Assembly: GCF_009834535.1 (NCBI RefSeq)
Contig: NC_045732.1
Coordinates: 79,980,001 to 80,044,000, forward strand
Reading direction: 5' to 3'
DNA length: 64,000 nucleotides
DNA from: Camelus ferus
Lineage: Eukaryota
Part shown: piece after piece, positions 6,331 to 62,158 of the stretch
How the letters are laid out: each line of letters begins with the position of its first letter
Position numbering within the stretch: position 1 is the first letter of the stretch
The notes under the pieces: model-generated
The model's database searches: none
What the model saw: only the letters and a program-made list of their open reading frames with translations
What the model was told of the DNA's origin: nothing
Position numbers and translations under genes: made by a program

Positions 6331-6701
6331 GACCCTGAGCTAGCGCGGAGAGGGCCTCCCGTGCTAGAAGAGTGGGAACCTGCCAGAGCCCAGGCCTCCC
6401 GCCACCACGCGGGTCCAGGGCTGTACCACAGTGTAGACCCGAGGTCTCCCCTCCTTTCTCTTCCAGGGTCTCCAGACACCGGGATGTGAAAGCCTAGGTC
6501 TGAGACACGTGTCCTCGGGTCACAGAGCACAGGAGGCCGGCAGTGCCGGGTGAGGTGTGGGCCCTGAGTGTGTACCCGGGGGCTCCCGGAACAGACGGGA
6601 ACCCACAAGGCCAACGTCCACTCCACACACCCCCTGTCGCCCCCAGAACCTCGGGCTGGTGCCGGCAGCACCCTGAGGAGTTGCCTCACTTCCCCCGTCA
6701 G

Positions 6702-6770
6702 GTTCACAGACGACCGTCCACCAGGAGGAGAGCCCCTGTGAGGCCGAGGGCACCCCTGAAGAGGAGACCT
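6702..6770 (+). other. Non-coding penultimate exon of MAGE S1 (69 nt), then a 74-nt intron 6771-6844. Homologs at 38115-38183, 26069-26137 and 60746-60814 (all -).
   Basis: ccccgtcag|GTTCAC...GAGACCT|gtaagt and ctctccccag|GCCC; canonical MAGE-A gene architecture. Confidence 0.8.
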
Positions 6771-6922
6771 GTAAGTCGCCTTTGTCAGAGCCCCTCAGGG
6801 TGGGTTTCTCAGCCCAGCCTGCTGACACACCCTCTCTCCCCCAGGCCCTTGGGTCTCCATTTGTCACCCCTTCCCTCGCTCCTCTCGGCTGCCCGACACC
6901 ACTCATCGTGCCCCCCGTTGAG

Positions 6923-7723
6923 ATGAGTGAGCTCCGCAAGGCTGCGGAAGACCTTCAGGACCCCAGAGACTCCCGGGGCCTCATGGATGTTCAGCAGATG
7001 GAGGCTGAGCAGGAGGGGGGCGCATCCCCCTGGTCCTCCTCCTCCTCAGTCTCCTCTTCCTACTCTGCCTGTGCCGTGTCCCTGCTCCATGATGCACAGC
7101 CTTCGATGGTGACTGACCTGGTGGGCTTCCTGCTCCTCAAGTATCACAGGAAGCAGCCGACCACCAGGGCAGAAATGCTGAGTATCTTCCTCAGAGAATA
7201 CCAGCACCACTTCCCTGCGGTCTTCAGCCAGGCCTCTGAGTACATGCAGCTGGTCTTTGGGGTGGATGTGAAGGAGGTGGATCCCGGGGGCCACTGGTAT
7301 GTCCTGGTCCCCACCCTGGGCCTCACCTGTGATGGGATGCTGGGCGATGGGCAGAGCATGCCCAAGAACGGCCTCCTGGTGATGCTCCTTTGCATGATCC
7401 ACCTGGAGGGAGAGCGCCTCCCTGAGGAGGAGGTGTGGGGAGCACTGAGCAAGCTGGGGCTGCGTGCTGGGAGGGAGCACTTCATCTACGGGGAGCCCAG
7501 GGAGCTCATCACCAAAGCGTGGGTGCAGGAGGGGTACCTGGAGTACCGGCAGGTGGCCAACAGCGATCCCGCTCGCTTCGAGTTCCTGTGGGGCCCCCGG
7601 GCCCACGCGGAGATCAGCAAGTTGCAAGTCCTGGAGCATGTACACAGGGCCAGTAGACGGGGTCCCAGTTCCTTCCCATCCCTGTCAGATGAGGCTGCTA
7701 GCGATGAGGAAGAGGAGGCCTGA
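6923..7723 (+). CDS. MAGEA: MAGE-A family protein, short form S1 (266 aa)
   Basis: Complete MAGE homology domain (LVGFLLLKY...FGVDVKEVDP...MPKNGLL...YGEPRELIT...LWGPRAHAE) with acidic tail. First true ATG at 6923 (the upstream homologous start is GTG). AATAAA at 8199-8204. Confidence 0.93.
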   Translation: MSELRKAAEDLQDPRDSRGLMDVQQMEAEQEGGASPWSSSSSVSSSYSACAVSLLHDAQPSMVTDLVGFLLLKYHRKQPTTRAEMLSIFLREYQHHFPAVFSQASEYMQLVFGVDVKEVDPGGHWYVLVPTLGLTCDGMLGDGQSMPKNGLLVMLLCMIHLEGERLPEEEVWGALSKLGLRAGREHFIYGEPRELITKAWVQEGYLEYRQVANSDPARFEFLWGPRAHAEISKLQVLEHVHRASRRGPSSFPSLSDEAASDEEEEA

Positions 7724-24925: not shown

Positions 24926-25933
24926 TCAGGGCCACTCTTCCTCATCACTCAACACCTCTTCAGACAGGGACAGGAAGGAACTGAGATTCCTTGTATTGAC
25001 CCTGAGCAAATGCTCCAGGACTTGCAGCTTGCTGGTCTCCGCGTGGGCCCGGGGCCCCCACAGGAGCTCGTAGCGAGGGGGATCGCTGTTGGGCACCTGC
25101 AGGTACTCCACGTACTCCTCCCGCACCCACACGTTGGTGATGAGCTCCCTGGGCTCCCCGTAGATGCAGTGCTCCCTCCCGGGATACACCCCCATGACAC
25201 TCAGTGCTTCCCACATCTTCTCCTCAGTGGCGCACTCTCCCTCCAGGAGGATCACACCCAGGAGCATCACCAGGAGGCCGTTCTTGGGCATGCTCTGCCC
25301 ATCGCCCAGCATCCCGTCACAGGTGAGGCCCAGGGTGGGGACCAGGACATACGAGTGCTCCCTGGGGTCCACCTCCTTCACATCCACCCCAAAGACCAGC
25401 TGCAGACACTCAGAGGCTTGGCTCAAGATCACAGGGAAGTGGTCCTGGTCATCTCTGAGGACCGCATTCAGCATGTCTTCCTTTGTGGTCGGCTCCTTTG
25501 AGCGGTACTTCAGGAGCAGGAAGCTCACCAGTTCAGCCACCTTCAAATGGAGTGGGTCTGGGTGTGAGGACTCGGCATCTGCGGGGTCCTGGCCGGTGCT
25601 GGGCCTCTCCTCATCTTGGCTGCTGGAGGTGCTGTCTTCCGACTGGCTCCATGGAGGGGCGGCGTCGTCAGCAGCGGGGAAGAAGCAGACACCCCGAGGG
25701 CTCTGCGGGGCACTGGGTGTCCCAGAATCATCCACCTCCTCCAGGGTGTCCAGGAACAGGACGGAGGAGGAGGGGGAGGGGGAGGAGGAGGAAGAGGATG
25801 AGGGAGACATGGGGGATGCATCCGCCACCTCCTCAGCCCCAATCTCCTGCGCAACCACCACATCCTCAGCCTCTCTTGGGTCCTGAAAGTCGGCTTCAGT
25901 CTGGTGGAGGTCACTCATCTGAACCCCAGGCAT
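24926..25933 (-). CDS. MAGEA: MAGE-A family protein, long form L1 (335 aa)
   Basis: gtcATGCCTGGGGTTCAGATG start; MAGE-N region (PQSPRG...WSQSED...EERPST) plus intact MAGE homology domain; AATAAA on - strand at 24486-24491. Confidence 0.93.
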   Translation of the reverse strand: MPGVQMSDLHQTEADFQDPREAEDVVVAQEIGAEEVADASPMSPSSSSSSSPSPSSSVLFLDTLEEVDDSGTPSAPQSPRGVCFFPAADDAAPPWSQSEDSTSSSQDEERPSTGQDPADAESSHPDPLHLKVAELVSFLLLKYRSKEPTTKEDMLNAVLRDDQDHFPVILSQASECLQLVFGVDVKEVDPREHSYVLVPTLGLTCDGMLGDGQSMPKNGLLVMLLGVILLEGECATEEKMWEALSVMGVYPGREHCIYGEPRELITNVWVREEYVEYLQVPNSDPPRYELLWGPRAHAETSKLQVLEHLLRVNTRNLSSFLSLSEEVLSDEEEWP

Positions 25934-26499
25934 GACGACTGGTGTCCGCGCCGACAGGAGTGGAGGCAGGGATGACAGATGGGGACCCACGGGCCTGGGG
26001 AAGAAAGGGAATGCCAGTGGCTCGGGCTGAGAAACCCACCCTGAGGGGCTCTGACAAAGGCGACTTACAGGTCTCCTCTTCAGGGGTGCCCTCGGCCTCA
26101 CAGGGGCTCTCCTCCTGGTGGACGGTTGCCTGTGAACCTGACGGGGGAAGTGAGGCAACTCCTCAGGGTGCAGCCGGCACAGCCTGAGGTTCTGGGGGCG
26201 ACAGGGGGTGTGTGGAGTGGATGTTGGCCTTGTAGGGTCCCCTCTGTTCCGGGAGCCCCCGGGTACACACTCAGGGCCCACACCTCACCCGGCACTGCCG
26301 GCCTCCTGTGCTCTGTGACCCGAGGACACGTGTCTCAGACCTAGGCCTTCACCTCCCGGTGTCTGGAGCCCCTGGAAGAGAAAGGAGGGGAGACCTCGGG
26401 TCTACACTGTGGTACAGCCCTGGACCCGCGTGCTGGCAGGAGGCCTGGGCTCTGGCAGGTTCCCACTCTTCTAGGGTGGGAGGTTCTGTCCGCGCTAGC

Positions 26500-29400
26500 T
26501 CAGGGTCCTCACCTTGACTCCAAGCGCGACCTGGGATTCTGCTCTCCAAGGACCTGAGGGCCCCTCCTTATAGCAAGTCCCCGGCCTCTCTCAGCCCTGG
26601 ATGCGTAAGTCAGGACACACCACGTGTGCTCATCCTGCCTGGGGGCCTCCCAGGACTGACAGCAGGGGCAGGATCAGTTTTGCATCCCCTCTGTTCTGGG
26701 GTCTCGGGTCCCCTCACTCCTCCCTCGGGGTCCTCACCTTGACTCCTGGCAGGACCTGGGATTCCCCTCTCAGCCCACCTGAGGCCTCGCCCGTCATACC
26801 AGGACGCCAGTCCCTCTGTGACCCGCATTTCAGGAACTGCTGCCTGAGGTCATCCCGCCCTATGGCCTCCCAGGACTGACTCTGTTCTGGGGTCCAGGGT
26901 CCCTCAGTGCTCCCTCGCGGTCGTCTCCTTCACTCCCACTGGCACCTCAGATTCTCTTTTCCACAGACCTAGGACCTCCCCCACCCCTCCTCACACTATG
27001 TCCCGAGTCTCTCTGACCGAGTTGCGGAAGTCAGGACACTCCGATTGGGCTCATCCCGCCCTGGGCCCTCAAGACGGCTGACAGCAGGGGCACATTTATG
27101 TGGAATGGCCTCTTTTCTGGGGTCTTGGGTCCCCTCCCTCTTCCCTCAGGGACCTCAATTTGAGTCAGGCGGCATGTAGTCTCCCCTCTGCCCACTGCAG
27201 GCCCCGCCCCTCATACCAGGACCCTACTCTCTAAGAGACTGGGATGTCAGGAAATGTCACCTGTGGTCATCCTGCCCTATGACCTCCCAGGACTGACTCT
27301 TTTCTGGGATCCAGGGTCCCCTGAGTCCTCCCTCCGCGACCTCACCTTGACTCTCGGCAGGAACTGGGATTCCCCCCTCAGCTCACCTGAGGCCCCGCCC
27401 CTGAAATCTGGTCCAGTTTCTCTGAAGCCTGGATGTCAAGAAATGCTGCCAAAGGTGATCCCGACCTATGACGTCCCAGGACCGACTCTGTTCTAGGGTC
27501 CAAGGTTACCGCAGTCCTCCCTCACAGTCCTCGCGTTCTGTCCTGACAGGTCCTCAGCTTCGCATTTCCGACCTGAGGCTTCGCTCCTCATACCAGCGCC
27601 CCAGTCCCCAGTCCCCAGTCCCTCTGAGGCCCAGTTGTGGAAGTCAGGGCACGCTGCCATGTGCTCGTCCGCCCGGGGCCTCCAAGGGCTGACTGCTGGG
27701 GTAGATATCTTGGGGTCCCCTCTCTTCTGGAGTCCTGGGCCTCAGTCCTCCCTCAGGGTCCTCACTGTGACTCCCGCCAGGAACCGGGATTCCCCGCTCA
27801 GCCCACTTGAGGCCCCGCCCCTCATACCAGGTCCCCAGTCTCTCTGAGTACGGGATGTTCAGGGAAATGCGACTGTGGTCATTCCACCCTACTGCCTCCC
27901 AGGACAGACTCCGTTGTGGGGTCTAGGGTCACCTCAGTCCTCCCTCGGGGTCCTCACCTTGACTGCCGGCGGCCCTGGGATTTTCCCCTCGGCCGACCTG
28001 AGGCCCCGCCCCTCCAACAAGGACCCCAGTCCCTCTGAGTCTCGGACCCGGATGTCAGGAAATGCCGCCTGTGGGCATCCCGCCATATGGCCTCCCAGGA
28101 CTGACTCTGTTCTGGGGTCCAGGGTCCCTCAGTGCTCCCTCGCTGTCGTCACCTTCACACCCAGCGGGACCTGAGATTCTCTCCTCCGCAGACCTGAGCG
28201 CCCCTCTTCCCTTACACCCGGTCCCCAGTCTCTCTGAGACCGGGTAGCGGAAGTCAGGACCCTCTAAGCAGGCTCATTCTGCCCTGGGGTCTCTGGACGG
28301 CTGAAAGTAGGGGCGCATTTATGTGGGATGGCCTCTTTTCTGGGGCCCTGAGTCCCCTCTGTTTTCCCTCAGGGTCCTCACCTTGACTCAGGCGGCATGT
28401 GGTCTCCCCTCTGCCCACCTGAGGCCCCGCGCCTCATCCCAGGACCCCCGTCTCTCCGAGACAAGACCGTGATGTCAGGAAATGCGGCCTGGGGTGATCC
28501 CGCCCTATGACCTTCCAGGACCGATTCTCTTCTGGGGTCCAGGGTCCCCTCAGTCCTCCCTCCGGGTCCCCACTTTGATGCCTGGCAGGAACTGGGATTC
28601 TCACCTCGGCCCACCTGAGGCCCCGCCCCTCAAACCAGGACCCCAGTCTCTCTGAGACCCTGATGTCAGGAAATGCGGCCTGGGGTGATCCCGCCCTATG
28701 ACCTTCCAGGACCGACTCTGTTCTGAGGTCCAGGGTCCCGCAGTCCTCCCTCACAGTCCTTGCTTACTGTCCTGACAGGCCCTCAGCTCCGCATTCCCGA
28801 CCTGAGGCTTCGCCCCCCATACCAGCGCCCCAGTCCCTCCGAGGCCCGGATGCGGAAGTCCCGGCACGCTGCCATGTGCTCGTCCAGCCGGGGCCTGCCG
28901 AGGTAGAAATCGTGGGGTCCCCTCTCTTCCGGTGTCCAGGGTCTCGGCAGTCCTCCCTGAGGTTCCTCATTGTGCCTCCCGCCAGGAACTGGGTTTCTGC
29001 CCTCAGCGCACCCGAGGCCCCGCCCCTCATACCAGGTCCCCGCTCGCTCTGAGACGCGGACCCGGATGTGAGGAAACGCTGCCCGAGGTGATCCCGCTCT
29101 ACGACCTCCCGGGACCGACTCTGTTCTGGGGTCCAGGGTCACCGCAGTCGTCCCTTTGGGTCCTCACTTTGACTCCGGTGGCTTGTAGTCTCTCCTCTGC
29201 CCACCTGAGGCCCCGCCCCTCATACCAGGTCCCCAGTGCCTCTGAGAGCCCGGACGTCAGGAAATGTGCCTGTGGTCATTCCACCCTATGGCCTCCCAGG
29301 ACAGACTCTGTTCTGGGGTCCAGGGTCACCGCAGTCCTCCCTCAGAGTGCTCACCTTGACTCCTGGCAGGACTTGCGAGTCTCCGCTCTGCCCCCTTGAG

Positions 29401-29520
29401 GTCCCCCTCTCTAAATTAAGTCCCCCCTCCCTCTGAGACCCGGATGCGGAAGTCAGGGCTCGCTGCCATGTGCCTCCTAGGGCTTTCAGCAGGGCAGGTT
29501 TCTCTGGGTCACCCCACCCC
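26500..29520 (-). promoter_or_regulatory. MAGE promoter/first-exon module array upstream of L1 (15 cores)
   Basis: Recurrent GGATGTCAGGAAATG and GCGGAAGTCAGG cores, GCCCCGCCCC boxes and CCTCACCTTGACTC (reverse donor). Confidence 0.75.
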
Positions 29521-30590
29521 ACGCCCTCATTTCTCCATCCGCATGCTCACCTTGGGTCCTATCAGGCCCTGGGCCCTACCTCTGCCCACTTGAATTGCCT
29601 TCCCTGAGAACCAGGCCCTCCTCCTCCTAGTCCCCCGAGAAGCCTGGCCAGGATCCCCTAGGGCGGAGACGGATCCTGTGGGGCCTTCGTCCTCCCTCAG
29701 GCCCCTACCTTGACTCCCTGTAGGGCTGGGCTTCCTCTGTGCCAGTCTGGAGCCTCCTCCCAGACCCAGGCCCGTACCTTTCTCAGACCTCCCAGGCAGA
29801 AGTCAGGGCACATCACATCCAGACGCCATGCCTCGGGGTCTCCCAGGGCTGAAATCAGGTCCAGGCTGGATTCCTCGGACCCCCTGGGGAAGATGCCCCT
29901 CCCCATTACTCGCTCCTGAAGTTCCTAACTTGGCTCCTGGGTCCTTGATGAAATGCTGGTTGGGCCGGCTCCCTCCCTGTCAGCTCTGAGCTTGTGTCTC
30001 AGATGCACCCCTTGCAGAAAATGACTCTGAGTCCTAGACTCCATGCTGGGTGGGGAGCTGCAGCGCCCCTGACCGCCGCGGAGGGTCAGAGAAGAAGCAC
30101 CAGCCAGCCAGACTTCGGAAACGTTTCCCTCTAAAAGGCAGCGGCTGAGCAGCCGGACTTGGGGACGTCCTGCTCTTTCGAGGTTATCTAACATTTCATA
30201 GTTCAGAGCACTGATTTTCATTCTCTGAAGCCTCATTCAGAGTCAGAAATACATTTTACATCTCACCAAGTTTCCGGAAAGCATAGCCACTCTTAGGCTG
30301 CCTGATTCACTCCGATGCTCCATACTCTTGTTTCTTGTCCAGACTTCCTCTGCTATTTAAATGGTCAATTTTGAAAAGGACAGGCCTCATCCACTAAGGT
30401 GATTTCAGGTGGTTATTAGCACAAATTCCGCTGCCCTTAATCATCCCATCCTTCACACTGCCCTGATATTTCCCCATGGCTTCTGGCCTCTGTGGCCAGA
30501 GATGCTGAGCTCTCTCCCAATTTTCACAGTGAAACAAGGGTAGAAGTTTAAACTTTTCCTCTTACCCATCCTGCCATCTGCTTTTATCCA

Positions 30591-35695: not shown

Positions 35696-38600
35696 CAGCA
35701 CGTTCCTGCCCTGCCCTCTGCAGTAACGCCCACAAGGCCGGCGGGCTGGCAACGTGCTCTCTGGCCCTGAAGCCAGGACACAGGCTCAGCCTCGGAAACT
35801 CAGCAGCCCTCCACGGGACCGGAAGTGCCCGAGCACCTGCTCAGGTGGCATCAGGGACCCTGAAAGCCAGGACCTTCCTGTGCGGCAGGCAGCAGACTAG
35901 ACACAGAGGAAGGATGGTTAACTAGTTTCTCTTTACAAATCAGGCTAGAATACCCACCAAGAACCATCTTTCATCTCCGAGGAGGATTCTGAGCTGTTTT
36001 GTATTCAGCCTCGGCGGGCGTTCCCTCCCTGCGAATTCCAGGACCATTCCGCACCTATGGCTTTGGAGTCTGACCATCGAGGGGAGCTGACCCATCAGTG
36101 TAAGTGTCCAGCAGACCGTTTCCAAGAACACACCCCAGTAAATCCTACCCCAAGTTTGGGGCGGTTACCAAACCTCTTCAACTATATATGCCAGGACGGA
36201 GTACACTGTGAGCCACGTCAAACGCCACTCCTCCCTGCAGTTGGAGCATTCTGAGTGTCCTAGCAGCTCAGGCAGGATAACCAGGTCTCTAAGCATCCCT
36301 GAACAAAGTGCACCTTCCCCCCTCGCCCAGGAGATGTATCCACGATCCCAGAGGGACTGCTCACAGCAACCTCCCACCTGACACGTTCCTCTCACCACTA
36401 AAAGTGCCGTCTGCACGTCTGCCTGCCGCCACCACCCAGCTTCATTACCATCACCTCCCACAGAAGGACCCCCGCCCCCAACCCCAGCTTCCCAAAGAGA
36501 AGAGCAGAGGCTCGGTGAATGTGTGCGGATGAAGTGAGACGGTGAGCGGGGATCCTATTGATTCAGACTGATTTTCTCCTACTTTCTTAAATAACCCGTG
36601 GAAATCCAATTAAACATAGGGATATTACACGTATAAAATGACAAACAAGAAGGGATAAGAAGCGAGTTAATATTTTTACTTTTATTGTTCTAAATCTTCC
36701 CTCATCTATATTATTGCTAATTACTCTCACATTTCCCGAACAATTCGAATTGCAATTCCATATTATGTCATCCAGGATGACAGAAAAAAAAAAAAAAGAG
36801 AGACAGATTTCAGTCTCCTTTACAGAAGAGGAAAACTGTTGTGTTTGAACTGGATAAGCACACACACGTTGTGATCAATGTCATTCACAAAGTTAGATAC
36901 TGAAGCTTATTAAATCTTCTATTAATAGGAACAGCACTGAAAAACACCTACAGGAAACAAAGATCAATTTCCACGTCACCATAAAGGACGGGAGGAGCCC
37001 AGAGATGCTGTACGCCGTGCCCCCCGAGCTGGCCCGGGCCCTCACTCCTTCCAAGGCTGACTGCTCGCTCTGCAAACACAGAGTGAAGGATGGACTCCCT
37101 TCCTGCCCGGCAGGAGAAGCTGCTGGACAGGGGCCTGGAGGAGCCCGGCTGCAAGTCTGGCTCAGGCCTCCTCTTCCTCATCGCTAGCAGCCTCATCTGA
37201 CAGGGATGGGAAGGAACTGGGACCCCGTCTACTGGCCCTGTGTACATGCTCCAGGACTTGCAACTTGCTGATCTCCGCGTGGGCCCGGGGGCCCCACAGG
37301 AACTCGAAGCGAGCGGGATCGCTGTTGGCCACCTGCCGGTACTCCAGGTACCCCTCCTGCACCCACGCTTTGGTGATGAGCTCCCTGGGCTCCCCGTAGA
37401 TGAAGTGCTCCCTCCCAGCACGCAGCCCCAGCTTGCTCAGTGCTCCCCACACCTCCTCCTCAGGGAGGCGCTCTCCCTCCAGGTGGATCATGCAAAGGAG
37501 CATCACCAGGAGGCCGTTCTTGGGCATGCTCTGCCCATCGCCCAGCATCCCATCACAGGTGAGGCCCAGGGTGGGGACCAGGACATACCAGTGGCCCCCG
37601 GGATCCACCTCCTTCACATCCACCCCAAAGACCAGCTGCATGTACTCAGAGGCCTGGCTGAAGACCGCAGGGAAGTGGTGCTGGTATTCTCTGAGGAAGA
37701 TACTCAGCATTTCTGCCCTGGTGGTCGGCTGCTTCCTGTGATACTTGAGGAGCAGGAAGCCCACCAGGTCAGTCACCATCGAAGGCTGTGCATCATGGAG
37801 CAGGGACACGGCACAGGCAGAGTAGGAAGAGGAGACTGAGGAGGAGGAGGACCAGGGGGATGCGCCCCCCTCCTGCTCAGCCTCCATCTGCTGAACATCC
37901 ATGAGGCCCCGGGAGTCTCTGGGGTCCTGAAGGTCTTCCGCAGCCTTGCGGAGCTCACTCATCTCAACGGGGGGCACGATGAGTGGTGTCGGGCAGCCGA
38001 GAGGAGCGAGGGAAGGGGTGACAAATGGAGACCCAAGGGCCTGGGGGAGAGAGGGTGTGTCAGCAGGCTGGGCTGAGAAACCCACCCTGAGGGGCTCTGA
38101 CAAAGGCGACTTACAGGTCTCCTCTTCAGGGGTGCCCTCGGCCTCACAGGGGCTCTCCTCCTGGTGGACGGTCGTCTGTGAACCTGACGGGGGAAGTGAG
38201 GCAACTCCTCAGGGTGCTGCCGGCACCAGCCCGAGGTTCTGGGGGCGACAGGGGGTGTGTGGAGTGGACGTTGGCCTTGTGGGTTCCCGTCTGTTCCGGG
38301 AGCCCCCGGGTACACACTCAGGGCCCACACCTCACCCGGCACTGCCGGCCTCCTGTGCTCTGTGACCCGAGGACACGTGTCTCAGACCTAGGCTTTCACA
38401 TCCCGGTGTCTGGAGACCCTGGAAGAGAAAGGAGGGGAGACCTCGGGTCTACACTGTGGTACAGCCCTGGACCCGCGTGGTGGCGGGAGGCCTGGGCTCT
38501 GGCAGGTTCCCACTCTTCTAGCACGGGAGGCCCTCTCCGCGCTAGCTCAGGGTCCTCACCGTGACTCCAAGCGGGACCTGGGATTCGGCTCTCCAACCAC

Positions 38601-40116
38601 CTGAGGGGCCCTCCTTATAATCAGTCCGAGGTCTCTCTGAGACCTGGATGCGGAAGTCAGGACGCACCACGTGTGCTCATCCTGCCTGGGGGCCTCCCAG
38701 GGCTGCCAGCAGGGGCAGGATCGGTTGCGTCCCCCTGTTCTGGGGTCTCGGGTCCCCTCACTCCTCCCTCGGGGTCCTCACCTTGACTCTTGGCAGGAGT
38801 TGAGATTCCCCTCTCAGCCCACCTGAGGCCCCGCCCGTCATACCAGGACGCCAGTCCCTCTGAGACCCGCATTTCAGGAACTGCTGCCTGAGGTCCTCCC
38901 GCCCTATGGCCTCCCAGGACTGACTCTCTTCTGGGGTGCAGGGTCCCTGAGTGCTAACTCGCGGTCGTCACCTTCACTCCCAGGCGGCCCTGAGATTCTC
39001 TCCTCCGCAGACCTGAGCCCCCCGCCTCCCTTTCTCTATGTCCCCAGTCTCTCTGAGACCCGGATGCGGAAGTCAGGACAAACCTCGTGGGCCTGTCCTC
39101 CCCTCGGGCCTCCGGACAGCTGATAGCAAGGGCGCCTTTCTGTGGGGTGGCCTATCTTCTGGATCCCGGGTCCCCTCAGTTCTCCCTCAGCGTCGTCACT
39201 CAGGCGGCATGTCGTCTCCCCTCTGCCCACCCGTGGCCCCGCCCCTCATCCCAGGACCCCAGTCCCTGTGAGACCCGGATGTCAGGAAATGCCGCCTCTG
39301 GTTATTCCGACCTATGGCTTCCCAGGACTCATTATGTTTTAGGGTCCAGGGTCCCTCACTGCTCGCTCGCAGTCGTCACCTTCACTCCCAGTGGGACATC
39401 GGATTCTCTCCTCTGAATATCTGAGGGTCCCCCCATCTCACACAAAGTCCCCGGTCTCTCTGAGACCAGGGTGCCGCAGTCATGACACGACACGTGGGCC
39501 TGTCCTGCCCTCGGGCCTCCGGGCAGCTGATAGTAAGGTTCCCTGTCTGTGGATGGTCTGTTTTCTGGGTTCCGGGGCCCTTCCTTCCTCCCTCAGGGTC
39601 CTCACTTTGACTCAGGCAGCATGTGGTCTACCTTCTGGCAACCCGAGGCCCCGCCCGTCATATCAGGACCCTAGTCCCTCTGAGACCCGGATGTCAGGAA
39701 ATGCCACCGGTGGTCACCCTGCCCCAAGGCCTCCAAGGTCCAACGCTGTCCCGGGGTGCAGGATCCATCCGTTCTCCCTCGGGGTCCTCACTTTGACTCA
39801 GGCGGTATGTAGCCTCCCCTTGGAACCCTCGAAGCCCCACCCCTCATCCCAGGACCCCAGACCCTGTGAGACCCGGATGTCAGGAAATGCCGCCGCTGGT
39901 CACCCTGCCCTAAGGTCTCCAAGGACCAACACTGTCCCGGGGTGCGGGATCCCCTGTTCTCCCTCAGGGTCCTCACTTTCACTCAGGCAGCACTGGCCTC
40001 CCCTTGGACCACCCGAGGCCCCGCCCCTCATCCCAGGACCCCAGTCCCTCCGAGACCCGGATGTCAGGAAGTCAGGACCCCACGAGTGCTCATCCCACCC
40101 AGGCCCTCCCAGGGCT
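35691..40116. repeat. Inverted repeat arm B-right
   Basis: Reverse-complement match to 4769-9195. Confidence 0.97.
37162..37962 (-). CDS. MAGEA: MAGE-A family protein, short form S1' (identical protein to S1)
   Basis: Inverted copy of 6923-7723; AATAAA on - strand at 36681-36686. Confidence 0.93.
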   Translation of the reverse strand: MSELRKAAEDLQDPRDSRGLMDVQQMEAEQEGGASPWSSSSSVSSSYSACAVSLLHDAQPSMVTDLVGFLLLKYHRKQPTTRAEMLSIFLREYQHHFPAVFSQASEYMQLVFGVDVKEVDPGGHWYVLVPTLGLTCDGMLGDGQSMPKNGLLVMLLCMIHLEGERLPEEEVWGALSKLGLRAGREHFIYGEPRELITKAWVQEGYLEYRQVANSDPARFEFLWGPRAHAEISKLQVLEHVHRASRRGPSSFPSLSDEAASDEEEEA

Positions 40117-40900
40117 GACAGCAGGGGCGGGGATCTGTGGGGCCCCTTCTGTCCTCCCTCAGCGTCCTCAGCTTCAGCCCTGGCGGGTCCTGGGACGCCC
40201 CCTTGTTGACCCGAGCCCACACCCTCACACCAAGGCCCTCACTGCCCTGACACCCCCAGGGGAGTCTGTGGACGCACATCAGGCCAACAGGCCCAGGGCT
40301 TCCCAGGACTGTGGACGCCAGGGGCTGAGATGGATTCCCCGGGGATCCCGCAGCCCTCCCTCTGCTCCCCACCTGGGCTCCAGGCTGGGCCTGGGCCCCT
40401 CCCTCTGCCCACCTGAGTTTGATCCCATTGTACTCAGACCCTCCCCAGGCAGGACCCCCGAGAGGGGAGTGGGGATGAGGGGGTGGGGATCTGATCCTCG
40501 CAACCCTGCCTGGGGTCTCCCAGGGGTGACCGCAAAACCGACCTGGATGCCTGCCCCCGCCCCCCAAGTCCCCTCACACGGTTTTACCTTGACTCCTGGC
40601 AGCGCTGGGCTCCTTCCCAGTGCAGACCTGAAGCCGGCCTCCCTCACCCAGGCGCTCACCTCTCTCACCTCGCAAGGGTGGGGCATCAGTGCACGTGACA
40701 TCCGGACCCACTGCCCTGGAGTCTCCCAGGGCTGTCGGGGGCGGGTGGGGGTGCCGGAGGTGGATTCCCTGGGGTCCTCAGGCTCCTGTGTCCTCACCTG
40801 GACTCCTGACAGGATCTGGGAGCCACCCTCTGCCCTCCTGAGACTGCGTCTCTCAGACCCAGCCTCTGACTCCCCGAGTTCGCTGAGGAGGTGGGGGCCG
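38555..40900 (-). promoter_or_regulatory. MAGE promoter module array upstream of S1'
   Basis: Inverted copy of 4769-6330, continuing into more diverged units. Confidence 0.72.
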
Positions 40901-44899: not shown

Positions 44900-47800
44900 A
44901 GAGGCTGGGTGTGAGAGACACACTCTCAGGAGGGCAGAGGGCGAATCCCAAGTCCTGTCAGGAGTCAAGGTGAGGACACAGGAGACTGAGGCCCGCAGGG
45001 AATCCACCTCCGGCCCCCCCCGACAGCCCTCGGAAACCCCTGGGCTCAGGGTCCAGATGTGACGGGCACTGATGCCCCACCCTTGGGAGGTGAGAGAGGT
45101 GAGGGCCTGGGTGAGGGAGGCCGGCTTCAGGTCTGCAGAGGGAAGGAGCCCAGCGTTGCCAGGAGTCAAGGTAGAACCGTGTGTGGGGACTCGGTTTGCA
45201 GGCATCCAGGTCGGTTCTGCGGTCACCCCTGGGAGACCCAAGGCAGGGTTGCAAGGATCAGATCCCCACCCCCTCATCCCCGCTTCCCTCTCTGGTGTCC
45301 TGGCTCTGGAGGGTCCGAGTCCAAGGGGACCAAGCTCAGGTGGGCAGAGGGAGGCACCCAGGCCCAGCCGGGAGCCCAGGTGAGGAGCAGAGGGAGGGCT
45401 GAGGGAACCCATGGAATCCATCTCAGCCCCTGGCGTGCCACAGTCCTGGGAAGCCCTGGGCCTGGTGGCCTGATGTGAGTCCAGAGGCTCCCCTGGGGGT
45501 CTCAGGGCAGTAAGGGCCTTGGTGTGAGGGTGTGGGCTCGGGTCAACAAGGGGGCGTCCCAGGACCTGCCGGGGCTCAAGCTGAGGACGCTGAGGGAGGA
45601 CCGAAGGGGCCCCACAGATCCCCGCCCCTGCTGCCAGCCCTGGGAGGGCCTGGGTGGGATGAGCACTCGTGGGGTCCTGACTTCCTGACATCCGGGTCTC
45701 GGAGGGACTGGGGTCCTGGGATGAGGGGCGGGGCCTCGGGTGGCCAGAGGGGAGACCACATGCCGCCTGAGTCAAGGTGAGGACCCCGAGGGAGAACGGA
45801 GGGATCCTGCACCCGGGACAGCGTTGCACCTTGGAGACCATAGGGCAAGGTGACCACTGGCGGCATTTCCTGACATCCGGGTCTCTGAGGGACTGGGGTT
45901 CCTGGGATGAGGGGTGGGTCCTCGGGTGGCCAGAGGCTAGACGACATGACGCCTAAGTGACGACCCTGAGGGAGAACTGAGGGGACCCCGAACTCGGAAA
46001 AGTGGTCATCCAACACAAAGGGGCCCTTGCTAGCTGCTGTCCGGAGGCCCGAGGGCAGGACAGGCCCACGTGTCGTGTCATGACCGCGGCATCCTGGTCT
46101 CAGAGAGACCTGGCACTTAGTGTGTGATGGGGGTGGGGGGAAACCCTCAGATCTGCAGAGGAGAGAATCCCAGGTCCCACTGGGAGTGAAGGTGACGACC
46201 GCGAGCCAGCAGTGAGGGACCCTGGACCCGAAAACACAGTCGGTCCTGGGACGTGATAGGGCGGCATCACCTCAGGCAGCATTTCCTGACATCCGGGTCT
46301 CGGAGGGACTGGGGTCCTGGTTTGAGGGGCGGGGCCTCGGGTGGGCTGAGGAGAGAATCCCAGGTCCTGCCGGGCGTCAAGGTGAGGACCCTGGGGGAGG
46401 ACTGAGGGGGCCAGAGACCCCAGAACACAGTGGGTCCCGGGAGGTCATGGGGCGGCATCACCTCAGGCAGCATTTCCTGACATCCGGGTCTCAGAGGGAC
46501 TGGGGACCGGGTTTGAGGGGCGGGGCCTCGGGTGCGCTGAGGAGAGAATCCCGGTTCCTGCCGGGCGTCAAGGCGAGGGCCCTGAGGAAGGACTGGGGAC
46601 ACCCTGGACTCCAGAATCGAGGGGACCCCAAGATATCTACCCCGGCAGGCAGCCCTCGGAGGCCTCAGGCCGGACGAGCCCATGGCAGCGTGCCGGGACT
46701 TCCGCGTCCGGGCCTCGGAGGGACTGGGGCGCTGGTGTGGGGAGCGAAGCCTCAGGTTGGGAAACGCGGGGCTGAGGGCCTGTCAGGACAGTAAGCAAGG
46801 ACTGTGAGGGAGGACTGCGGGACCCTGGACCCCAGTACAGAGTCGGTCCTGGGAGATCATAGGGTGGCATGACCACAGGCACATTTCCTGACATCCGCGT
46901 CTCAGAGGGACTGGGGACCGGGTTTGAGGGGCGGGGCCTCAGATGGGCTGAGGTGGGAATCCCCGTTCCTGCCTGGCGCCACGGTGAGGATCCTGAGGGA
47001 GGACTGAGGGGACCAGAGACCCCAGATCAGTGGGGACCCGCCGAACCGATCCTGCCCCTGCTTTTCTCCCTGGGAGGCCCCAGGGCGAGATGAGCACACG
47101 TTGGTGTCTCGACTTCCCCATCCGGGTCTCAGAGAGACTGGGGCCTTAATATAAGGAGGGGGACCTCAGGTATGCAGAGGAGGGTATCCCCGGTCCCCCC
47201 GGTAGTCAAGGTGAGGACCCTGAGGGAGGACTAAGAGACCCTGCACCCCGGAACAGAGTCGGCCATGGGGGGCTATAGGGCAGGATGGCCAAAGGCAGCA
47301 TTTCCTGACATCGCGGTCTCAGAGGGGACAGGGATCCTGGTATGAGGGGGCGGGGCGTCAGATGGGCAGAGGACAGAATCCTAAATTACCAGGAGGCAAT
47401 GTGAGGACCGTGAGGGAGCCTTTGCCCTTGTGCTGGGTCTTGGAGGCCCCAGAGCAGGGTGACCAGGTGAGATGCTTTCTGACCTCTTAACTCAGAGGTC
47501 CTTGGGAGGTGAAGTCCCTGGTCTGAGGAGTGTGGCTCAGATGTGCAGAGGGTGGTCTCCCCGGAACCCCCAGTAGGACTGGGCAGACCCCCTCCCCAGG
47601 TAGAGGGGGCCTCAACAGAAACTTGCTCCTCTGCTCCTTCCTGGGAGGCCCGGGTGTGAGTCAGGAGGCATCACCTCCCCACTTTATCCTCAAACTCAGT
47701 GCGATGGTGGTGTCGGCCTGCAGGGGACAACCTCATGTTAGCTGAGGGGAGGGTCCCAGGACTTGCTGGGAGTAAATGTGAATATCTTGATACTGAGAGT

Positions 47801-48600
47801 AGAGAGTGAGCCCACAGAATCCGGCCCTGCCCCCTGTCATCCCTGAAGTCCCTGGGCAGGAGTGGCCAGTGGTGCTGCCCCCTCACCTCTGCCCCAGGCT
47901 CTCAGGGAATTCAGACCTAGTTCTGAGGTTGGCAGAAGGAGCCACAACCGGTCAGCAGCAGAAGGACTCACAGGATGTGCCAGGACTCAGGAGAAGGACC
48001 CTTTGGGTGGATGCAGGGCGTGAGGAGACCCTCACCCCAAAAGAGATGGGAACTTACAGTGTCCGGCTTGAGCTGTTTCAGCCCTAGGAGTCCCCGGTCA
48101 GGTCTGGCCGGATGGGGCCTGCCATCACTTCCGTCACGTGGTTGGGGGTGGGGTATCTCAGGGTGTGAGGACCTTGGTCTGAGGGGAAACATCAGGCCAG
48201 CAGAGGGAGGAGTCCTAGGATATCCCACGTGTCAAGGCAAGGACTCTTCATGAGGACCAAATGTACCCCGCCATCTCAGGAGAGGAAGGACCCCACCGGC
48301 TCCAGCTGACCCCTGTTCCCAGCCCTGGAAGGAACAGTCAGTGGTGGCCCTAAGTGCCGTGCTCACTTCCATCCTGGGTGGGAAGGTGGGAGTCTTCAGG
48401 GAGTTGAGGTCTGGGTCTGAAGGGCAGATGTCAACTCATCATCCCAGGTGGGGGCAGGGGGGAAGAGCAGGCCCTGGCGGGAGTAAAGATGCATGGCCTC
48501 CAGGCACTGAGGGCACCTCCGCCCAGGGCAGAGGGGCCGATCCCCGCTGCCAGTGCTTCTGGGTTTTTCGGGGGGAGCTGGGGGTGGATGTTGTGTAAAT
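44900..48600 (+). promoter_or_regulatory. MAGE promoter module array upstream of S2 (9 clear cores at 45681-47299, decayed units to about 48600)
   Basis: Cores at 45681, 45864, 46081, 46280, 46471, 46697, 46882, 47111 and 47299, with GC boxes and GTCAAG|GTGAGG donors. Confidence 0.72.
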
Positions 48601-48629
48601 GGATCCTGGGACCAATTTCCACGTAGGGG

Positions 48630-49505
48630 AGAGGTTCCCCAGACCAACGACAGTTCTCAGACAGCAGCAGAGTGTTCAGGAATTCAACTGCGTTCTGACA
48701 CTGTCTAGCCAGAGATGGCATCGGACCCTCTGGTTCAGGCCCAGTCCTCCAAGACTGCCCTCCCCCCACCACTTCAGAAGCCCACCGCAAGGCAAGGTTC
48801 TTGCCTGTGCTGCTAAATGGCCAGCTGTAGGTTGGGGATTCCAACTCCCTCCTCCTTGGGTTTCCAACGCTGGTGACAAGTCGAGGCTGTTACGTGTCCT
48901 TCTGAAAGACCTGTCCTTCTGAAAGACCTTCAGGGGTTGCCACGCCCTCCTCCTCAGGTTTGGTTGATTTGCTAGAGTGGCTCACAGGTCTCTGACAAAC
49001 ATACTACTTCCTAGATCACCAGCTGAACATAAAGGGCATGAGTCACGAAGAGCCAGATGGAAGAGGTGCTAGGGCCAAGGTGTGCGGGAGCGGGGCCGAC
49101 TTCCCCGCTCTCTCAGACAGCGCCACTTGCCCCAGCTCTCTACCTGCTCGCCAACCCAGAAGCTCTCCAAACCCATCCTTTTGGGGTTTGACGGAGGCTT
49201 CATTACATAAGCACGATTGGTTAAATCATTGGCCATTGGCAACTGAACTCAAATCTCCAGCCTTTCTCCCCTCCCTGGTGGTGCTGGGGAGGGGCCAAAA
49301 GATCCAAACTTTTAATCACATGATTGGCTCTTCTGGCAACCAGCCCCATTTTAGGTGCTTTGCAAACACATCTCATTCACATAAAAAACAAAAAAAGCAC
49401 ATTCATCACTCTCAACACTGAGGACATCCCAAGGGCTTTGGGAGCTGTGAACAAGGAACTGTGCCCAGAAACCAAAGTCAATGACCAGAGGTATCCTTGT
49501 CCTGA
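48630..49505 (-). mobile_element. MER21-family LTR, antisense, inside the S2 promoter array
   Basis: The reverse strand contains cacagctcccaaagcccttgg, ccaatggccaatgatttaaccaatc, atgtaatgaagcctcc and tgtgagccactctagcaaa. Confidence 0.75.
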
Positions 49506-49833
49506 ATCACAGCAGGAAAGGGGCCTCCTCTCCTTTCTCTCCCGCCTTTCAGGGAGGTGAGGACCTTGGTGTGAGAGGACGGGTCAGATCATCTGAAGGA
49601 ACCACGCCTTGGCAACAGAGAGAAGAGTCCCGGGTCCTCCCAGGAGTCAAGGTGAGGGCCCGAGGGAAGGGTGAGGGGACCCGCACGCCCACAACAAAGA
49701 TGGGACACCAAAGGAAACCTCGTTCAGCCCTAGAAACCCTGGGAAGGTCGATAAGCTTGTCCTCCCACAAGGCCACTGGGTCCCCACCTGTCACCCCGGC
49801 CCAGACTCCTGTCAGCTGCCAACACCTGTCATT

Positions 49834-59156: not shown

Positions 59157-61480
59157 ACATTTTCTTCTCATTGCTCCCCCAAATTCTAATTCCATGTTAT
59201 CTTGTTCAGGATGACACAATAAGATTGGAGATTTATAACTTGTTTTACAAAAGAGCAAATCTCTTGTGTTTGAACTCGATAAGGATACAGACATTGTGAT
59301 TAATGTCATTGACAAAGTTACATAGTGAAGCTTATTAAATCTTCTGATACAAGGAACACCACTGAAAAATTCCTACAGGAAACAAAGATCAATTTCCATG
59401 TCATCATAAGGGACGGGAGGAGCCCAGAGATGCTGTACACCGTGTACCCCCAACTGGCCCGGGCTGTCACCCCTTAGGAGGCTGCCTGCTCGCTCTCCAA
59501 ACACACAGTGAAGGATGGACTCACTTCCGGCCCGACAGGAGAAGCTGCCGGACAGGGGCCTGGAAGGAGCCCGGCTGCAAGTCTGGCTCAGGGCCACTCT
59601 TTCTCATCACTCAACACCTCTTCAGACAGGGACAGGAAGGAACTGAGATTCCTTGTATTGACCCTGAGCAAATGCTCCAGGACTTGCAGCTTGCTGGTCT
59701 CCGCGTGGTCCCGGGGCCCCCACAGGAGCTCGTAGCAAGGGGGATCGCTGTTGGGCACCTGCAGGTACTCCACATACCCCTCCCGCACCCACACGTTGGT
59801 GACGAGCTCCCTGGGCTCCCCGTAGATGCAGTGCTCCCTCCCGGGATACACCCCCATGACACTCAGTGCTTCCCACATCTTCTCCTCAGTGGCGCACTCT
59901 CCCTCCAGGAGGATCACACCCAGGAGCATCACCAGGAGGCCGTTCTTGGGCATGCTCTGCCCATCGCCCAGCATCCCGTCACAGGTGAGGCCCAGGGTGG
60001 GGACCAGGACATACGAGTGCTCCCTGGGGTCCACCTCCTTCACATCCACCCCAAAGACCAGCTGCACACACTCAGAGGCTTGGCTCAAGACCACAGGGAA
60101 GTGGTCCTGGTCATCTCTGAGGACCGCATTCAGCATGTCTTCCTTTGTGGTCGGCTCCTTTGAGTGGTACTTCAGGAGCAGGAAGCTCACCAGTTCAGCC
60201 ACCTTCAAATGGAGTGGGTCTGGGTGTGAGGACTCGGCATCTGCCGGGTCCTGCCCGGTGCTGGGCCCCTCCTCACCTTGGCTTCTGAGGCCATTGTCTT
60301 CCGACTGGCTCCAGGGAGGGGCTGCCACGGCTGTGGGGGAGGGGCAGACACCCTGAGGGCTCTGCGCGGGACTGGGTGTCCCAGAATCAGCCACCTCCTC
60401 CACTGCCCAGCAACAGGACTGAGTAGGAAGACGAGGAGGAGAAGGAGGAGGAGGAGGAGGAAGAGGAGGAGGAGGAGGGAGACAACGGGGATGCGCCCTC
60501 CTCCTCCTCAACCCAAATGTCCTGCTCATCCTCGGAATCCTCAGCCTCTCTTGGGTCGTGAAAGTCGGCTTCAGTGTGGTGGAGGTCACGCATCTGAACG
60601 GGAGGCACGGTGAGTGGTGTCGGGCAGCTGAGAGCAGCGAGGGCAGGGGTGACAGATGGGGACCCACGGGCCTGGGGGAGAAAGGGAGTGTCAGTGACCC
60701 GGGCTGAGAAACCCACCCTGAGGGGCTCTGACAAAGGCTACTTACAGGTCTCCTCTTCAGGGGTGCCCTCGGCCTCACAGGGGCTCTCCTCCTGGTGGAC
60801 GGTCGTCTGTGAATCTGACGGGGGAAGTGAGGCGGCTCCTCAGGGTGCAGCCGGCACAGCCCGAGGTTCTGAGGACGCCAGAGGGTGTGTGGAGTGGACG
60901 TAGGCCTTGTGGGGTCCCCTCTGTTCCCAGAGCCCCCGGGTACACACTCAGGGCCCACACCTCACCTTCAGTCCTGGCACTGCCGGCCTCCTGTGCTCTG
61001 TGACCCGAGGACACGTGTCTCAGACCTAGGCCTTCCCGGTGTCTGGAGCCCCTGGGAGAGAAAGGAGGGGAGATCCTCGGATCTACACTGTGGCACAGCC
61101 CTGGACCCGCGTGCTGGCAGGAGGCCTGGGCTCTGGCAGGTTCCCACTCTTCTAGAGTAGGAGGTCCTGTCCGCGCTAACTCAGGGTCCTCACCGGGACT
61201 CCAAGCGGGACCTGGGATTCTGCTCTCCAACCACCTGAGGGCCCCATCCTGATAGTAGGTCCCCGGTCTCTCTGAGCCCTGGATGCCGAAGTCAGGACAC
61301 ACCACGTGTGCTCATCCCGCATTGAGGCCTCCCAGGGCTGACAGCAGGGGCAGGATCGGTTGTGTCCCCTCTGTTCTAGGGTCTCAGGTCCCCTCACTCC
61401 TCCCTTAGGGTCCTCACCTTGACTGCTGGCGGGACCTGGGATTCCCCTCTCAGCCCACCCGAGGCCCCGCCCATCATACC
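59157..61480 (-). repeat. Direct repeat of 24495 to about 26880 (long MAGE 3'UTR, CDS and 5' region)
   Basis: Offset 34662 at the stop codons; 8 aa differences in the MAGE domain. Confidence 0.9.
59588..60593 (-). pseudogene. MAGEA: MAGE-A long form L2, frameshifted
   Basis: The ATG 60593 frame stops at TGA 60387-60389. A 2-nt loss near 60401-60406 relative to L1 (CTG GAC ACC CTG GAG vs CTG GGC AGT G GAG) separates it from the MAGE-domain frame. Also WGPRA to WGPRD. Confidence 0.8.
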
Positions 61481-62158
61481 AGGACCCCAGAACCTCCGAG
61501 ACCCGGATGTCAGGAAATGCCACCGGTGGTCACCCTGCCCCAAGGCCTCCAAGGTCCAACACTGTCCCGGGGTGCAGGATCCATCCGTTCTCCCTCGGGG
61601 TCCTCACTTTGACTCAGGCGGCATGTAGCCTCCCCTTGGAACCCCCGAAGCCCCACCCCTCATCCCAGGACCCCAGTCCCTCGGAGACCCGGATGTCAGG
61701 AAGTCAGGACCCCACGAGTGCTCATCCCACCCAGGCCCTCCCAGGGCTGACAGCAGGGGTGGGATGCTGTGAGGCACCTTCTGTCCTCCCTCAGCGTCCT
61801 CAGCTTGAGCCCCGGCAGGTCCTGGGACGCCCCCCTTGTTGACCCGAGCCCACACCCTCACACCAAGGCCCTCACTGCCCTGAGACCCCCAGGGGAGCCT
61901 CTGGACTCACATCAGGCCACCAGGCCCAGGGCTTCCCAGGACTGTGGACGCCAGGGGCTGAGATGGATTCCATGGGTTCCCTCAGCCCTCTCTCTGCTCC
62001 TCACCTGGGCTCCCGGCTGGGCCTGGGCCTCTCCCTGTGCCCACCTGAGCTTGGTCCCCTTGGACTCAGACCCTCCACAGCAAGGACACCCATGATGGAA
62101 CCGGAGGCGGAGGGGGGATGTCGCTGATCCCGCAGCCTACCAGGGGTCTCCCAGGTCT
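61170..62158 (-). promoter_or_regulatory. MAGE promoter module array upstream of L2, cut by an assembly gap
   Basis: Cores at about 61281, 61503 and 61690; same units as 39680-40520 and 45300-45750. Confidence 0.7.

What the first reader, a model, noticed from the sequence alone, without database searches (positions are those of the whole stretch)
27000..29520. Promoter array with nested higher-order periodicity (~200 bp, ~610 bp, ~1.2 kb)
Seen: type-II cores (GCGGAAGTCAGG) at 27024, 27637, 28247, 28852 and 29446 (spacing 613, 610, 605, 594). Each interval holds two type-I cores (GATGTCAGGAAATG at 27243/27432, 27854/28051, 28471/28662, 29065/29253). Alternate trimers share diagnostic linkers (cacatttatgtgg at 27091 and 28314; cacgctgccatgtgctcgtcc at 27650 and 28865), giving a hexamer. 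This is satellite-like higher-order organisation built from complete promoter-plus-donor units. Established: human MAGEA4 has tandem alternative promoters, and the MAGEA1 promoter depends on methylation-sensitive ETS sites. I do not know of a described higher-order structure.
Basis: partly seen in the sequence, partly recalled or inferred. Interest (0 to 1): 0.75.

Follow-up and report, generated by a model that had tools for sequence, protein, structure and literature searches.

The report
Camel MAGE-A tandem promoter/first-exon array
Upstream of a camel X-linked MAGE-A gene lie about 16 diverged tandem copies of a roughly 200-bp promoter/first-exon module, whose 1.2-kb and weaker 610-bp periodicities record old block duplications, an ordinary variant of the tandem alternative promoters reported for human MAGEA4.

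Summary
All stated cores and linkers are at the stated coordinates, with 1-2 mismatches in some. They belong to a tandem array of about 16 units of 188-223 bp (26225-29622).

The 1.2-kb level is solid. A six-unit block is present twice (84% identity, K2P 0.18), and four of six positions pair with starred support. The 610-bp level is weaker: a long-short-short pattern, 73% against 67-71% on other diagonals, and only the type-II units group (88/90).

This is not satellite-like. There are barely 2.3-2.6 block copies, 16% diverged. Unit subtypes and their order are shared with four paralogous MAGE arrays in the window, and array-wide homogenisation is rejected (AU p 9e-9).

The units work on the minus strand, upstream of an intact MAGE-A-type coding exon (ATG 25933). 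In gene sense each unit holds two ETS cores, a GC box and GT donors, but only about half keep a strong donor or GC box.

RNA contigs from three runs in two studies show one canonical intron, from the donor after 27387 to exon 2 at 26371. They run unspliced through units up to about 29235. Whether several units fire is untested.

Verdict: a new member of a known kind, of modest interest.

The parts
26225..29622 (-). Whole tandem array B: 16 consecutive units of 162-223 bp, upstream in gene sense of the MAGE-A coding exon
   Evidence: nhmmer profile hits; TRF period 187 at 28333-29446
26445..26829 (-). Proximal units B00 and B01, outside the hexamer. B01 belongs to the 'proximal' subtype shared with C01, E01 and D02.
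   Evidence: ML tree clade 98/95
26830..28050 (-). Six-unit block, copy 1 (units B02-B07: short, long IIa, short, short, long IIb, short)
   Evidence: 84.1% identity and K2P 0.18 to copy 2; starred pairs B02-B08, B03-B09, B05-B11, B06-B12
28051..29252 (-). Six-unit block, copy 2 (units B08-B13)
29253..29622 (-). Distal units B14 and degenerate B15. B15 has a type-II core with the IIb-type linker, out of hexamer phase.
   Evidence: 29419-29473 is 87% identical to 27610-27664
27024..27035 (+).
27243..27256 (+). Type-I ETS core (GATGTCAGGAAATG); further copies at 27432, 27854, 28051, 28471, 28662, 29065 and 29253. In gene sense, CCTGACATC is the slowest-evolving 9-mer of the unit.
   Evidence: 1.33 vs mean 3.5 parsimony steps; family-wise p 0.045
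27385..27387 (-). Splice donor in use, in unit B04: last exon base 27387, GT at 27386-27385 (CAG|GTGAGC, directly after the GC box)
   Evidence: Joint 26370->27386 with CT..AC ends on + (GT..AG on minus) in contigs of X2 and X3, and a matching loose end in X6; donor score 7.1
27387..29235 (-). Stretch covered by RNA contigs colinear with the genome (units B04-B13). It behaves as one long first exon or as nested first exons.
   Evidence: Contigs 27386-28115 (X6, 730 nt, 0 differences), 27386-27837, 27808-28128, 28170-28401 and 28758-29235 (X2). The intron bins 26502-27229 are near zero in X2.
26289..26371 (-). Exon 2 (5' UTR), with acceptor AG at 26373-26372
   Evidence: 96.4% identical to the A/C copies although the coding regions are 84% identical
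26069..26137 (-). Exon 3 (5' UTR), inferred from canonical AG and GTAAGT sites
   Evidence: 97% conserved in the A, C and E copies; the E-type exon 2 to exon 3 joint laid here
24926..25994 (-). Last exon with an intact 335-codon MAGE-A-type reading frame (ATG 25933-25931, stop 24928-24926)
   Evidence: Pfam MAGE_N + MAGE; translation; best solved relative is MAGE-A4, E 2e-75
38542..40872 (-). Paralogous array C, with a mirror copy A at 4824-6343 on +. Unit order is proximal, 6, 2, 6b, 2, 3, 3, giving a period of about 412 bp.
44904..49698 (+). Paralogous array D. It shares the colinear order 1, 4, u, 6, 2 with B05-B09 (82-84% identity).
60902..62072 (-). Paralogous array E: short, ending close to the N gap at 62159-62258, and lacking the six-unit block

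Best explanation
The segment is the core of a 3.4-kb tandem array of diverged MAGE-A promoter/first-exon modules. It forms the 5' region of a minus-strand MAGE-A-type gene on the camel X chromosome. In gene sense each roughly 200-bp unit reads: two ETS cores (CATTTCCTGACATCCGG, or TCCTGACTTCCGCATCCGG in the longer type-II units), then a GGGGCGGGG box, a CAG|GTGGGC site and a CAAG|GTGAGG donor. The periodicities are a historical record of unequal crossing-over and have no function of their own. Long and short unit subtypes in a fixed order already existed before the paralogous MAGE genes of this cluster separated. In this gene a six-unit, 1.2-kb block was then duplicated in tandem (K2P 0.18, as old as the paralogue split). 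The 610-bp signal is the long-short-short pattern inside that block. Shown: transcripts run in gene sense through at least units B04-B07, and probably to about 29235. They are spliced from one donor in unit B04 (27387) to exon 2 (26371). Inferred: the repeated ETS/Sp1-type modules act as a redundant, methylation-sensitive cluster of start sites and activator sites for germ-line expression, as in human MAGE-A promoters. Most internal donors are decayed or bypassed.
For: All five arrays in the window lie directly upstream of a MAGE coding exon, and their units have the same orientation relative to that gene. Donor-like CAAG|GTGAGG sites occur only on the gene strand. The GT..AG joint 27387->26371 appears in 3 runs from 2 studies, the intron is nearly uncovered, and contigs are colinear with the array for 452-730 nt with 0 differences. 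The hexamer is supported by lag-6 identity of 84% against 77-78% at non-multiple lags, the 1220 diagonal at 79.4%, four starred lag-6 pairs and block identity of 84.1%. Old age and lack of homogenisation are supported by subtypes shared among arrays B, C, D and E with support of 98-100, rejection of a B-only clade at p-AU 9e-9, the colinear B/D block at 82-84%, and paralogue coding regions at K2P 0.17-0.18. The ETS core is the slowest-evolving part of the unit. The human MAGE-A1 promoter depends on two Ets sites plus an Sp1 site blocked by CpG methylation (PMC4230356). Tandem alternative promoters of MAGE4a are on record by title only: De Plaen 1997, Genomics 40:305, cited in PMC5228337. Its content is quoted from my memory.
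Against: No transcription start was measured, because contigs cannot show starts, so multi-promoter use is an inference. Strong donors at 27958 and 28382 are read through in the contigs. Only 8 of 16 units keep a GC box, and CpG o/e is 0.43, so this is not a CpG island. The constraint signal on the ETS core is marginal (p 0.045), and the donor and GC box are not significantly conserved. The exon-2 letters attached to the array contigs are the E-copy version, which the assembly does not place downstream of this array. Reads of several paralogues are laid on this stretch, so depths are not gene-specific.
Confidence: 0.7

Rival explanations
1. One reading: a satellite-like higher-order repeat (monomer, trimer, hexamer) built from complete, independently firing promoter-plus-donor units and maintained as such.
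For: Diagonals exist at 610 and 1220. The type-II core recurs every third unit. Lag-6 pairs are starred and the type-II units group at 88/90. The ETS core is the most conserved element.
Against: There are only about 2.3-2.6 block copies, 16% diverged. Array-specific homogenisation is rejected at p 9e-9. Trimer positions of the short units are unresolved, and IIa and IIb are not sisters in the all-array tree. Half of the units lack a strong donor or GC box. RNA contigs read through units and show one donor. The fifth type-II unit breaks the phase.
Confidence: 0.1
2. Relic array: only one start region, near the distal end at about 29.24 kb just downstream of the ETS core at 29253, and one donor (27387) are functional. 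The units in between are merely a long repetitive 5' leader that is decaying neutrally.
For: Contig coverage runs from 27387 to 29235 and stops about 18 bp downstream of the core at 29253-29266 in X2. Internal strong donors are bypassed. The donor and GC box show no significant constraint. CpG is depleted.
Against: Contig ends are not transcript ends. The ETS core is conserved above background in units of all arrays. A 1.85-kb G-rich leader would be unusual for MAGE-A mRNAs. Unit subtypes have been retained in order in four paralogues over K2P of about 0.18.
Confidence: 0.2
3. The RNA signal over the array is not mature mRNA of this gene. It could be genomic DNA carry-over, nascent RNA, or cross-laid reads of paralogues, in which case the array would be a silent upstream repeat.
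For: Much of what is laid on exons 2-4 carries E-copy letters. The run labelled X1 may contain DNA and covers 29313-29898 as well.
Against: In X2 the intron bins 26502-27229 are nearly empty while 27412-29231 is covered, which DNA carry-over would not give. The junction has canonical GT..AG ends at the exon-2 acceptor, which is 96% conserved among paralogues. The array contigs match B with 0 differences, whereas the other arrays are no more than 84% identical.
Confidence: 0.07

Closest known systems
Human MAGEA4 (MAGE4a) tandem alternative promoters/first exons (De Plaen et al. 1997, Genomics 40:305; existence of the paper confirmed by citation, content from my memory: several homologous first exons, each with its own promoter, spread over about 5 kb)
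   Same: It is a MAGE-A-type gene with a multi-kilobase upstream run of mutually homologous promoter/first-exon copies in gene sense. Each copy has ETS- and Sp1-type motifs and a donor that can join a common downstream 5' UTR exon.
   Different: Here the units are packed head to tail at about 200 bp, and a six-unit block is duplicated. The RNA seen so far uses one donor and reads through the other units. No start site has been mapped.
Human MAGE-A1 core promoter (two Ets sites overlapping an Sp1 site, silenced by CpG methylation; PMC4230356)
   Same: Each camel unit has two adjacent ETS cores, one of them with a CpG (CCGGAT or GCGGAAGT), followed by a GGGGCGGGG box and a CAAG|GTGAG exon-1 donor.
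   Different: The module is repeated about 16 times. Methylation and factor binding are untested.
Alpha-satellite-type higher-order repeats
   Same: Diverged monomers (16-30% apart) lie in a fixed order that recurs as a multi-monomer block, and units group by position in the block.
   Different: Block copies are 84% identical, not 95-100%, and there are only 2-3 of them. There is no array-specific homogenisation. The unit is a gene-regulatory module in single-copy context and not a satellite.

Membership tests
MAGE-A tandem alternative promoter/first-exon array (MAGEA4 type) | Lies upstream of a MAGE-A coding exon with its units in gene sense | tested here: met
   The coding exon 24926-25933(-) has Pfam MAGE_N + MAGE and its best solved relative is MAGE-A4. 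The array is at 26225-29622 with donors on the minus strand. The same layout holds at all five genes in the window.
MAGE-A tandem alternative promoter/first-exon array (MAGEA4 type) | Units are homologous copies of one promoter/exon-1 module with ETS and Sp1-type sites | tested here: met
   Alignment of 32 units. GGAART core present in 11 of 16 units and a GC box in 8 of 16 units of array B.
MAGE-A tandem alternative promoter/first-exon array (MAGEA4 type) | Each unit supplies its own start site and a donor joined to a common downstream exon | tested here: inconclusive
   One canonical joint (27387->26371) in 3 runs; the other joints are single-run and non-canonical. Contigs cannot show starts. 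Only 8 strong donors remain.
MAGE-A tandem alternative promoter/first-exon array (MAGEA4 type) | Germ-line/tumour-restricted activity controlled by CpG methylation | not testable with these tools
   The RNA holders include 'reproductive system' libraries, but there are no methylation data.
Satellite-type higher-order repeat | Units group by position within the higher-order block | tested here: met
   Four of six hexamer positions form starred pairs; the other two are unresolved but not rejected.
Satellite-type higher-order repeat | Block copies are much more alike (about 95-100%) than the units within a block | tested here: not met
   Blocks are 84.1% identical against units at 70-88%.
Satellite-type higher-order repeat | Many block copies homogenised within the array (concerted evolution) | tested here: not met
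   There are 2 full copies plus a partial, out-of-phase third. A clade of all B units is rejected at p-AU 9e-9.
CpG-island promoter | CpG observed/expected of at least about 0.6 at high G+C | tested here: not met
   G+C is 0.627 and CpG o/e is 0.43 over 26445-29622.

The most novel reading that the evidence does not exclude
The array is a working homotypic cluster. Many methylation-sensitive ETS modules jointly drive germ-line transcription from several nested starts into one long, G-skewed, repeat-built 5' leader that is spliced from a single GC-box-adjacent donor. Under this reading, block duplications and deletions of units (16 units here, 7-8 in the paralogues, 3-4 in copy E) tune the output of individual MAGE-A paralogues.
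Probability: 0.15. Interest if true: 0.5.

Novelty: new member of a known kind. Interest (0 to 1): 0.3.

Why it matters
MAGE-A genes are the textbook case of promoters switched by DNA methylation. An array of about 16 natural variants of the same ETS/Sp1 module, with paralogous arrays of different length beside it, is a ready-made series for asking how unit number and unit type affect germ-line expression. The nested periodicity itself only documents how such arrays grow, by unequal crossing-over of multi-unit blocks. It does not point to a new mechanism.

Tried and rejected
- **Plus-strand reading of the units.** Rejected. There is no MAGE exon downstream on the plus strand, strong donors occur only on the minus strand, and the RNA joint is GT..AG on the minus strand.
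- **Trimer as a true duplication level.** AU tests for the three trimer positions neither show nor reject them. Among the 15 possible pairings of the six positions the trimer pairing scores best, but only by about 4 points, which corresponds to about 1 in 15.
- **Long (type-II-like) units as one clade across all arrays.** Not recovered, and not rejected (p-AU 0.33).
- **Joints 26373->29927 and 26376->26730.** Each is seen in one run with non-canonical ends, and the first contig leaves the window sequence at 29947. I treat both as paralogue or alignment artefacts.
- **Joint 26139->26291 with 8 letters between.** This turned out to be the E-copy exon 2 to exon 3 splice laid on B.
- **Dating the block against the 34.5-kb duplication.** Abandoned, because B-E identity is mosaic, ranging from 65% to 100%.
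- **Literature.** The De Plaen 1997 text is not held. No open paper describing higher-order structure in MAGE promoters was found.
- **Cross-species comparison.** None of the tools holds mammalian genomes.

Full report
**1. Observation**

- GCGGAAGTCAGG is exact at 27024, 28247 and 29446. It has one mismatch at 27637 and reads GCGGAAGTCCCG at 28852.
- GATGTCAGGAAATG is exact at 27243, 28051, 28471 and 28662. It has 1-2 mismatches at 27432, 29065 and 29253, and two inserted bases at 27854.
- Dinucleotide shuffles give about 0.5 matches per window, against 12 and 24 found.
- Both linker pairs are present.

A profile built from the units finds 16 consecutive copies from 26225 to 29622. It also finds four further arrays in the window.

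**2. Periodicity**

| Measure | Result |
|---|---|
| Self-BLAST, shift 1220 | 79.4% over 1597 bp |
| Self-BLAST, shift 608 | 73.0% over 2244 bp |
| Self-BLAST, shift 1836 | 71.9% |
| Self-BLAST, shifts 192 / 805 / 423 / 1036 | 71.3 / 70.5 / 67.7 / 67.0% |
| Mean unit identity, lags 1 / 2 / 3 / 6 | 78 / 77 / 81 / 84% |

- In a tree of the 14 full units of this array, B02-B08, B03-B09, B05-B11 and B06-B12 (all lag 6) are starred pairs.
- The four type-II units form a group at 88/90. The remaining short units are unresolved.
- AU tests neither show nor reject the trimer positions (p 0.27-0.42).
- The two six-unit blocks (26830-28050 and 28051-29252) are 84.1% identical (K2P 0.18). Adjacent trimers are 77-79% identical (K2P 0.25-0.28).
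- The fifth type-II unit (29446) carries the IIb linker where the phase predicts IIa.

So the 200-bp and 1.2-kb levels are solid. The 610-bp level is a long-short-short pattern with weak phylogenetic support.

**3. What it is**

- Pfam finds MAGE_N + MAGE in five reading frames. Each has one of the arrays directly upstream, and its units have the same orientation relative to the gene.
- For this array the gene is on the minus strand. It has an intact 335-codon frame (ATG 25933, stop 24926) whose best solved relative is MAGE-A4, E 2e-75.
- In gene sense the unit consensus reads as follows: ETS cores (CATTTCCTGACATCCGG), about 35 nt, GGGGCGGGG, CCTCAG|GTGGGC, about 35 nt, GTCAAG|GTGAGGAC, then about 100 nt to the next core.
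- The longer type-II units have an extra TTCCGC in the core and an insert of about 30 bp.
That is compatible with ETS sites but reverses the direction of the 'promoter plus donor'.

**4. History**

- In a tree of 32 units from arrays B, C, D and E, six subtypes with support of 96-100 each contain units from several arrays.
- Read from the gene outwards, B is: proximal, 6, 2, u, 1, 4, u, 6, 2, u, 1, 4, u, 6'.
- D has u, proximal, 1, 4, u, 6b, 2, 3.
- C has proximal, 6, 2, 6b, 2, 3, 3.
- The order 1-4-u-6-2 is colinear in B and D at 82-84% identity.
- Holding all B units as one clade costs 326 log-likelihood units (p-AU 9e-9).
- Arrays C and D have their own dominant period of about 412-415 bp.

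The differentiated units and their order therefore predate the paralogue split (coding regions K2P 0.17-0.18). Different block duplications or deletions then gave each array its own period. There is no sign of ongoing homogenisation. This is the expected product of unequal crossing-over, not a satellite.

**5. Function: what is shown**

Logan contigs of RNA libraries were laid on 24500-29950. X2 and X3 are 'reproductive system' libraries from one study. X6 comes from a second study. X1 may contain DNA.

- A joint from 26370 to 27386 has CT..AC ends on the plus strand, that is GT..AG on the minus strand. It is seen in X2 and X3, and X6 shows it as a loose end.
- The donor is CAG|GTGAGC in unit B04, directly after the GC box (score 7.1).
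- The acceptor is the polypyrimidine-AG before 26371.
- In X2 the intron bins 26502-27229 are nearly empty, while 27412-29231 is covered.
- Contigs follow the genome without a difference from 27386 to 27837 (X2, X3) and to 28115 (X6). X2 continues to 29235.
- Strong donors at 27958 and 28382 are read through.
- Only eight strong minus-strand donors remain in the array. Eight of 16 units keep a GC box, and CpG o/e is 0.43.
- Across all 32 units the ETS core is the slowest-evolving 9-mer: 1.33 against a mean of 3.5 parsimony steps, family-wise p 0.045. The donor and GC box are not significantly conserved.

**6. Function: what is inferred**

The human MAGE-A1 promoter is driven by two Ets sites and an Sp1 site that are blocked by CpG methylation (PMC4230356). 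By analogy, I infer that the units form a redundant cluster of ETS/Sp1 modules supplying start sites and activation for germ-line expression. Most internal donors would be decayed or bypassed. No start site was measured, and contigs cannot show one. The rival reading, a single distal start with the units as a passive 1.85-kb leader, remains open.

**7. Caveat on the RNA**

- The exon-2 letters attached to the array contigs in X2 and X6 are the 5-nt-shorter version. The window shows that version only in copy E.
- The high-depth joint 26139->26291 is the E-copy exon 2 to exon 3 splice laid on B.
- On the minus strand E lies upstream of B, so the array cannot be spliced to E's own exon 2.
- There are three possibilities: the sampled animals' B gene has an E-type exon 2; the reference is wrong there; or the contig switches transcripts at a shared 30-mer.
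- In every case the contig requires k-mers that join B04-specific letters to the start of exon 2, so the splice stands. Which exon 2 follows is unresolved.

**8. Comparison and verdict**

The closest known case is the set of tandem alternative promoters of human MAGE4a/MAGEA4 (De Plaen 1997). The paper's existence is confirmed through a citation, the text is not held, and its content is quoted from memory. I found no open paper describing a higher-order pattern in such arrays.

The finding is real but ordinary. It is a new member of a known kind, and the 'satellite-like' and 'complete units' parts of the interpretation are not supported.

Noticed in passing
window 26289-26371 vs 60976-61051; RNA contigs: RNA contigs join the array-B first exon (0 differences over 452-730 nt) to an exon 2 carrying the 5-nt deletion. 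In the assembly that version exists only in copy E, which lies upstream of B on the coding strand. This points to a polymorphism or gene conversion, a reference error, or a contig switch at a shared 30-mer.
   Followed up: partly
window 24500-27100 vs 59162-61770 and 36710-39150: Gene B is a mosaic. It is 96-100% identical to copy E over 24500-25522, and 81-90% over the 5' part of the coding region. Beyond 26692 it is closer to copy C (84-96%) than to E (65-88%).
   Followed up: partly
window 26289-26371 and 26069-26137 (copies at 6467-6549, 38336-38418, 60976-61051; 6702-6769, 38116-38183, 60747-60813): The two small 5' UTR exons are 94-97% identical among paralogues whose coding regions are only about 84% identical. 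This suggests constraint or gene conversion on the leader exons.
   Followed up: no
window 4769-9195 vs 40116-35691; 1-4668 vs 58708-54038: There are inverted duplicates at 99.8% and 99.6% identity, that is palindrome arms carrying a MAGE gene plus its array, interrupted by the N gap 4669-4768.
   Followed up: no
window 60902-62158, N gap 62159-62258: Array E has only 3-4 units and stops close to an N gap. Its distal part resembles the distal part of array C (87%) and not array B. The sequence after the gap has no array similarity.
   Followed up: partly
every unit, e.g. window 27315-27335 (minus strand): The intronic motif GAGGGAGGA, about 10 nt after the CAAG|GTGAGG donor, is the second most conserved 9-mer of the unit: 1.67 steps against a mean of 3.5, not significant family-wise.
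   Followed up: no
window 26500-30000: The coding-sense strand is G-rich and A-rich throughout the array (plus-strand GC skew -0.15 to -0.25). This is the skew typical of R-loop-prone promoter-proximal DNA.
   Followed up: no
window 16132-17196 (-): A reading frame with a reverse-transcriptase domain (Pfam RVT_1), lying among three N gaps. It is probably a LINE fragment.
   Followed up: no
window 49546-49698 and 49834-50664: Gene D has array-like units reaching to within about 140 bp of its coding frame, and no BLAST match to the exon 2 and exon 3 leaders of the other copies. Its 5' structure appears to be different.
   Followed up: no
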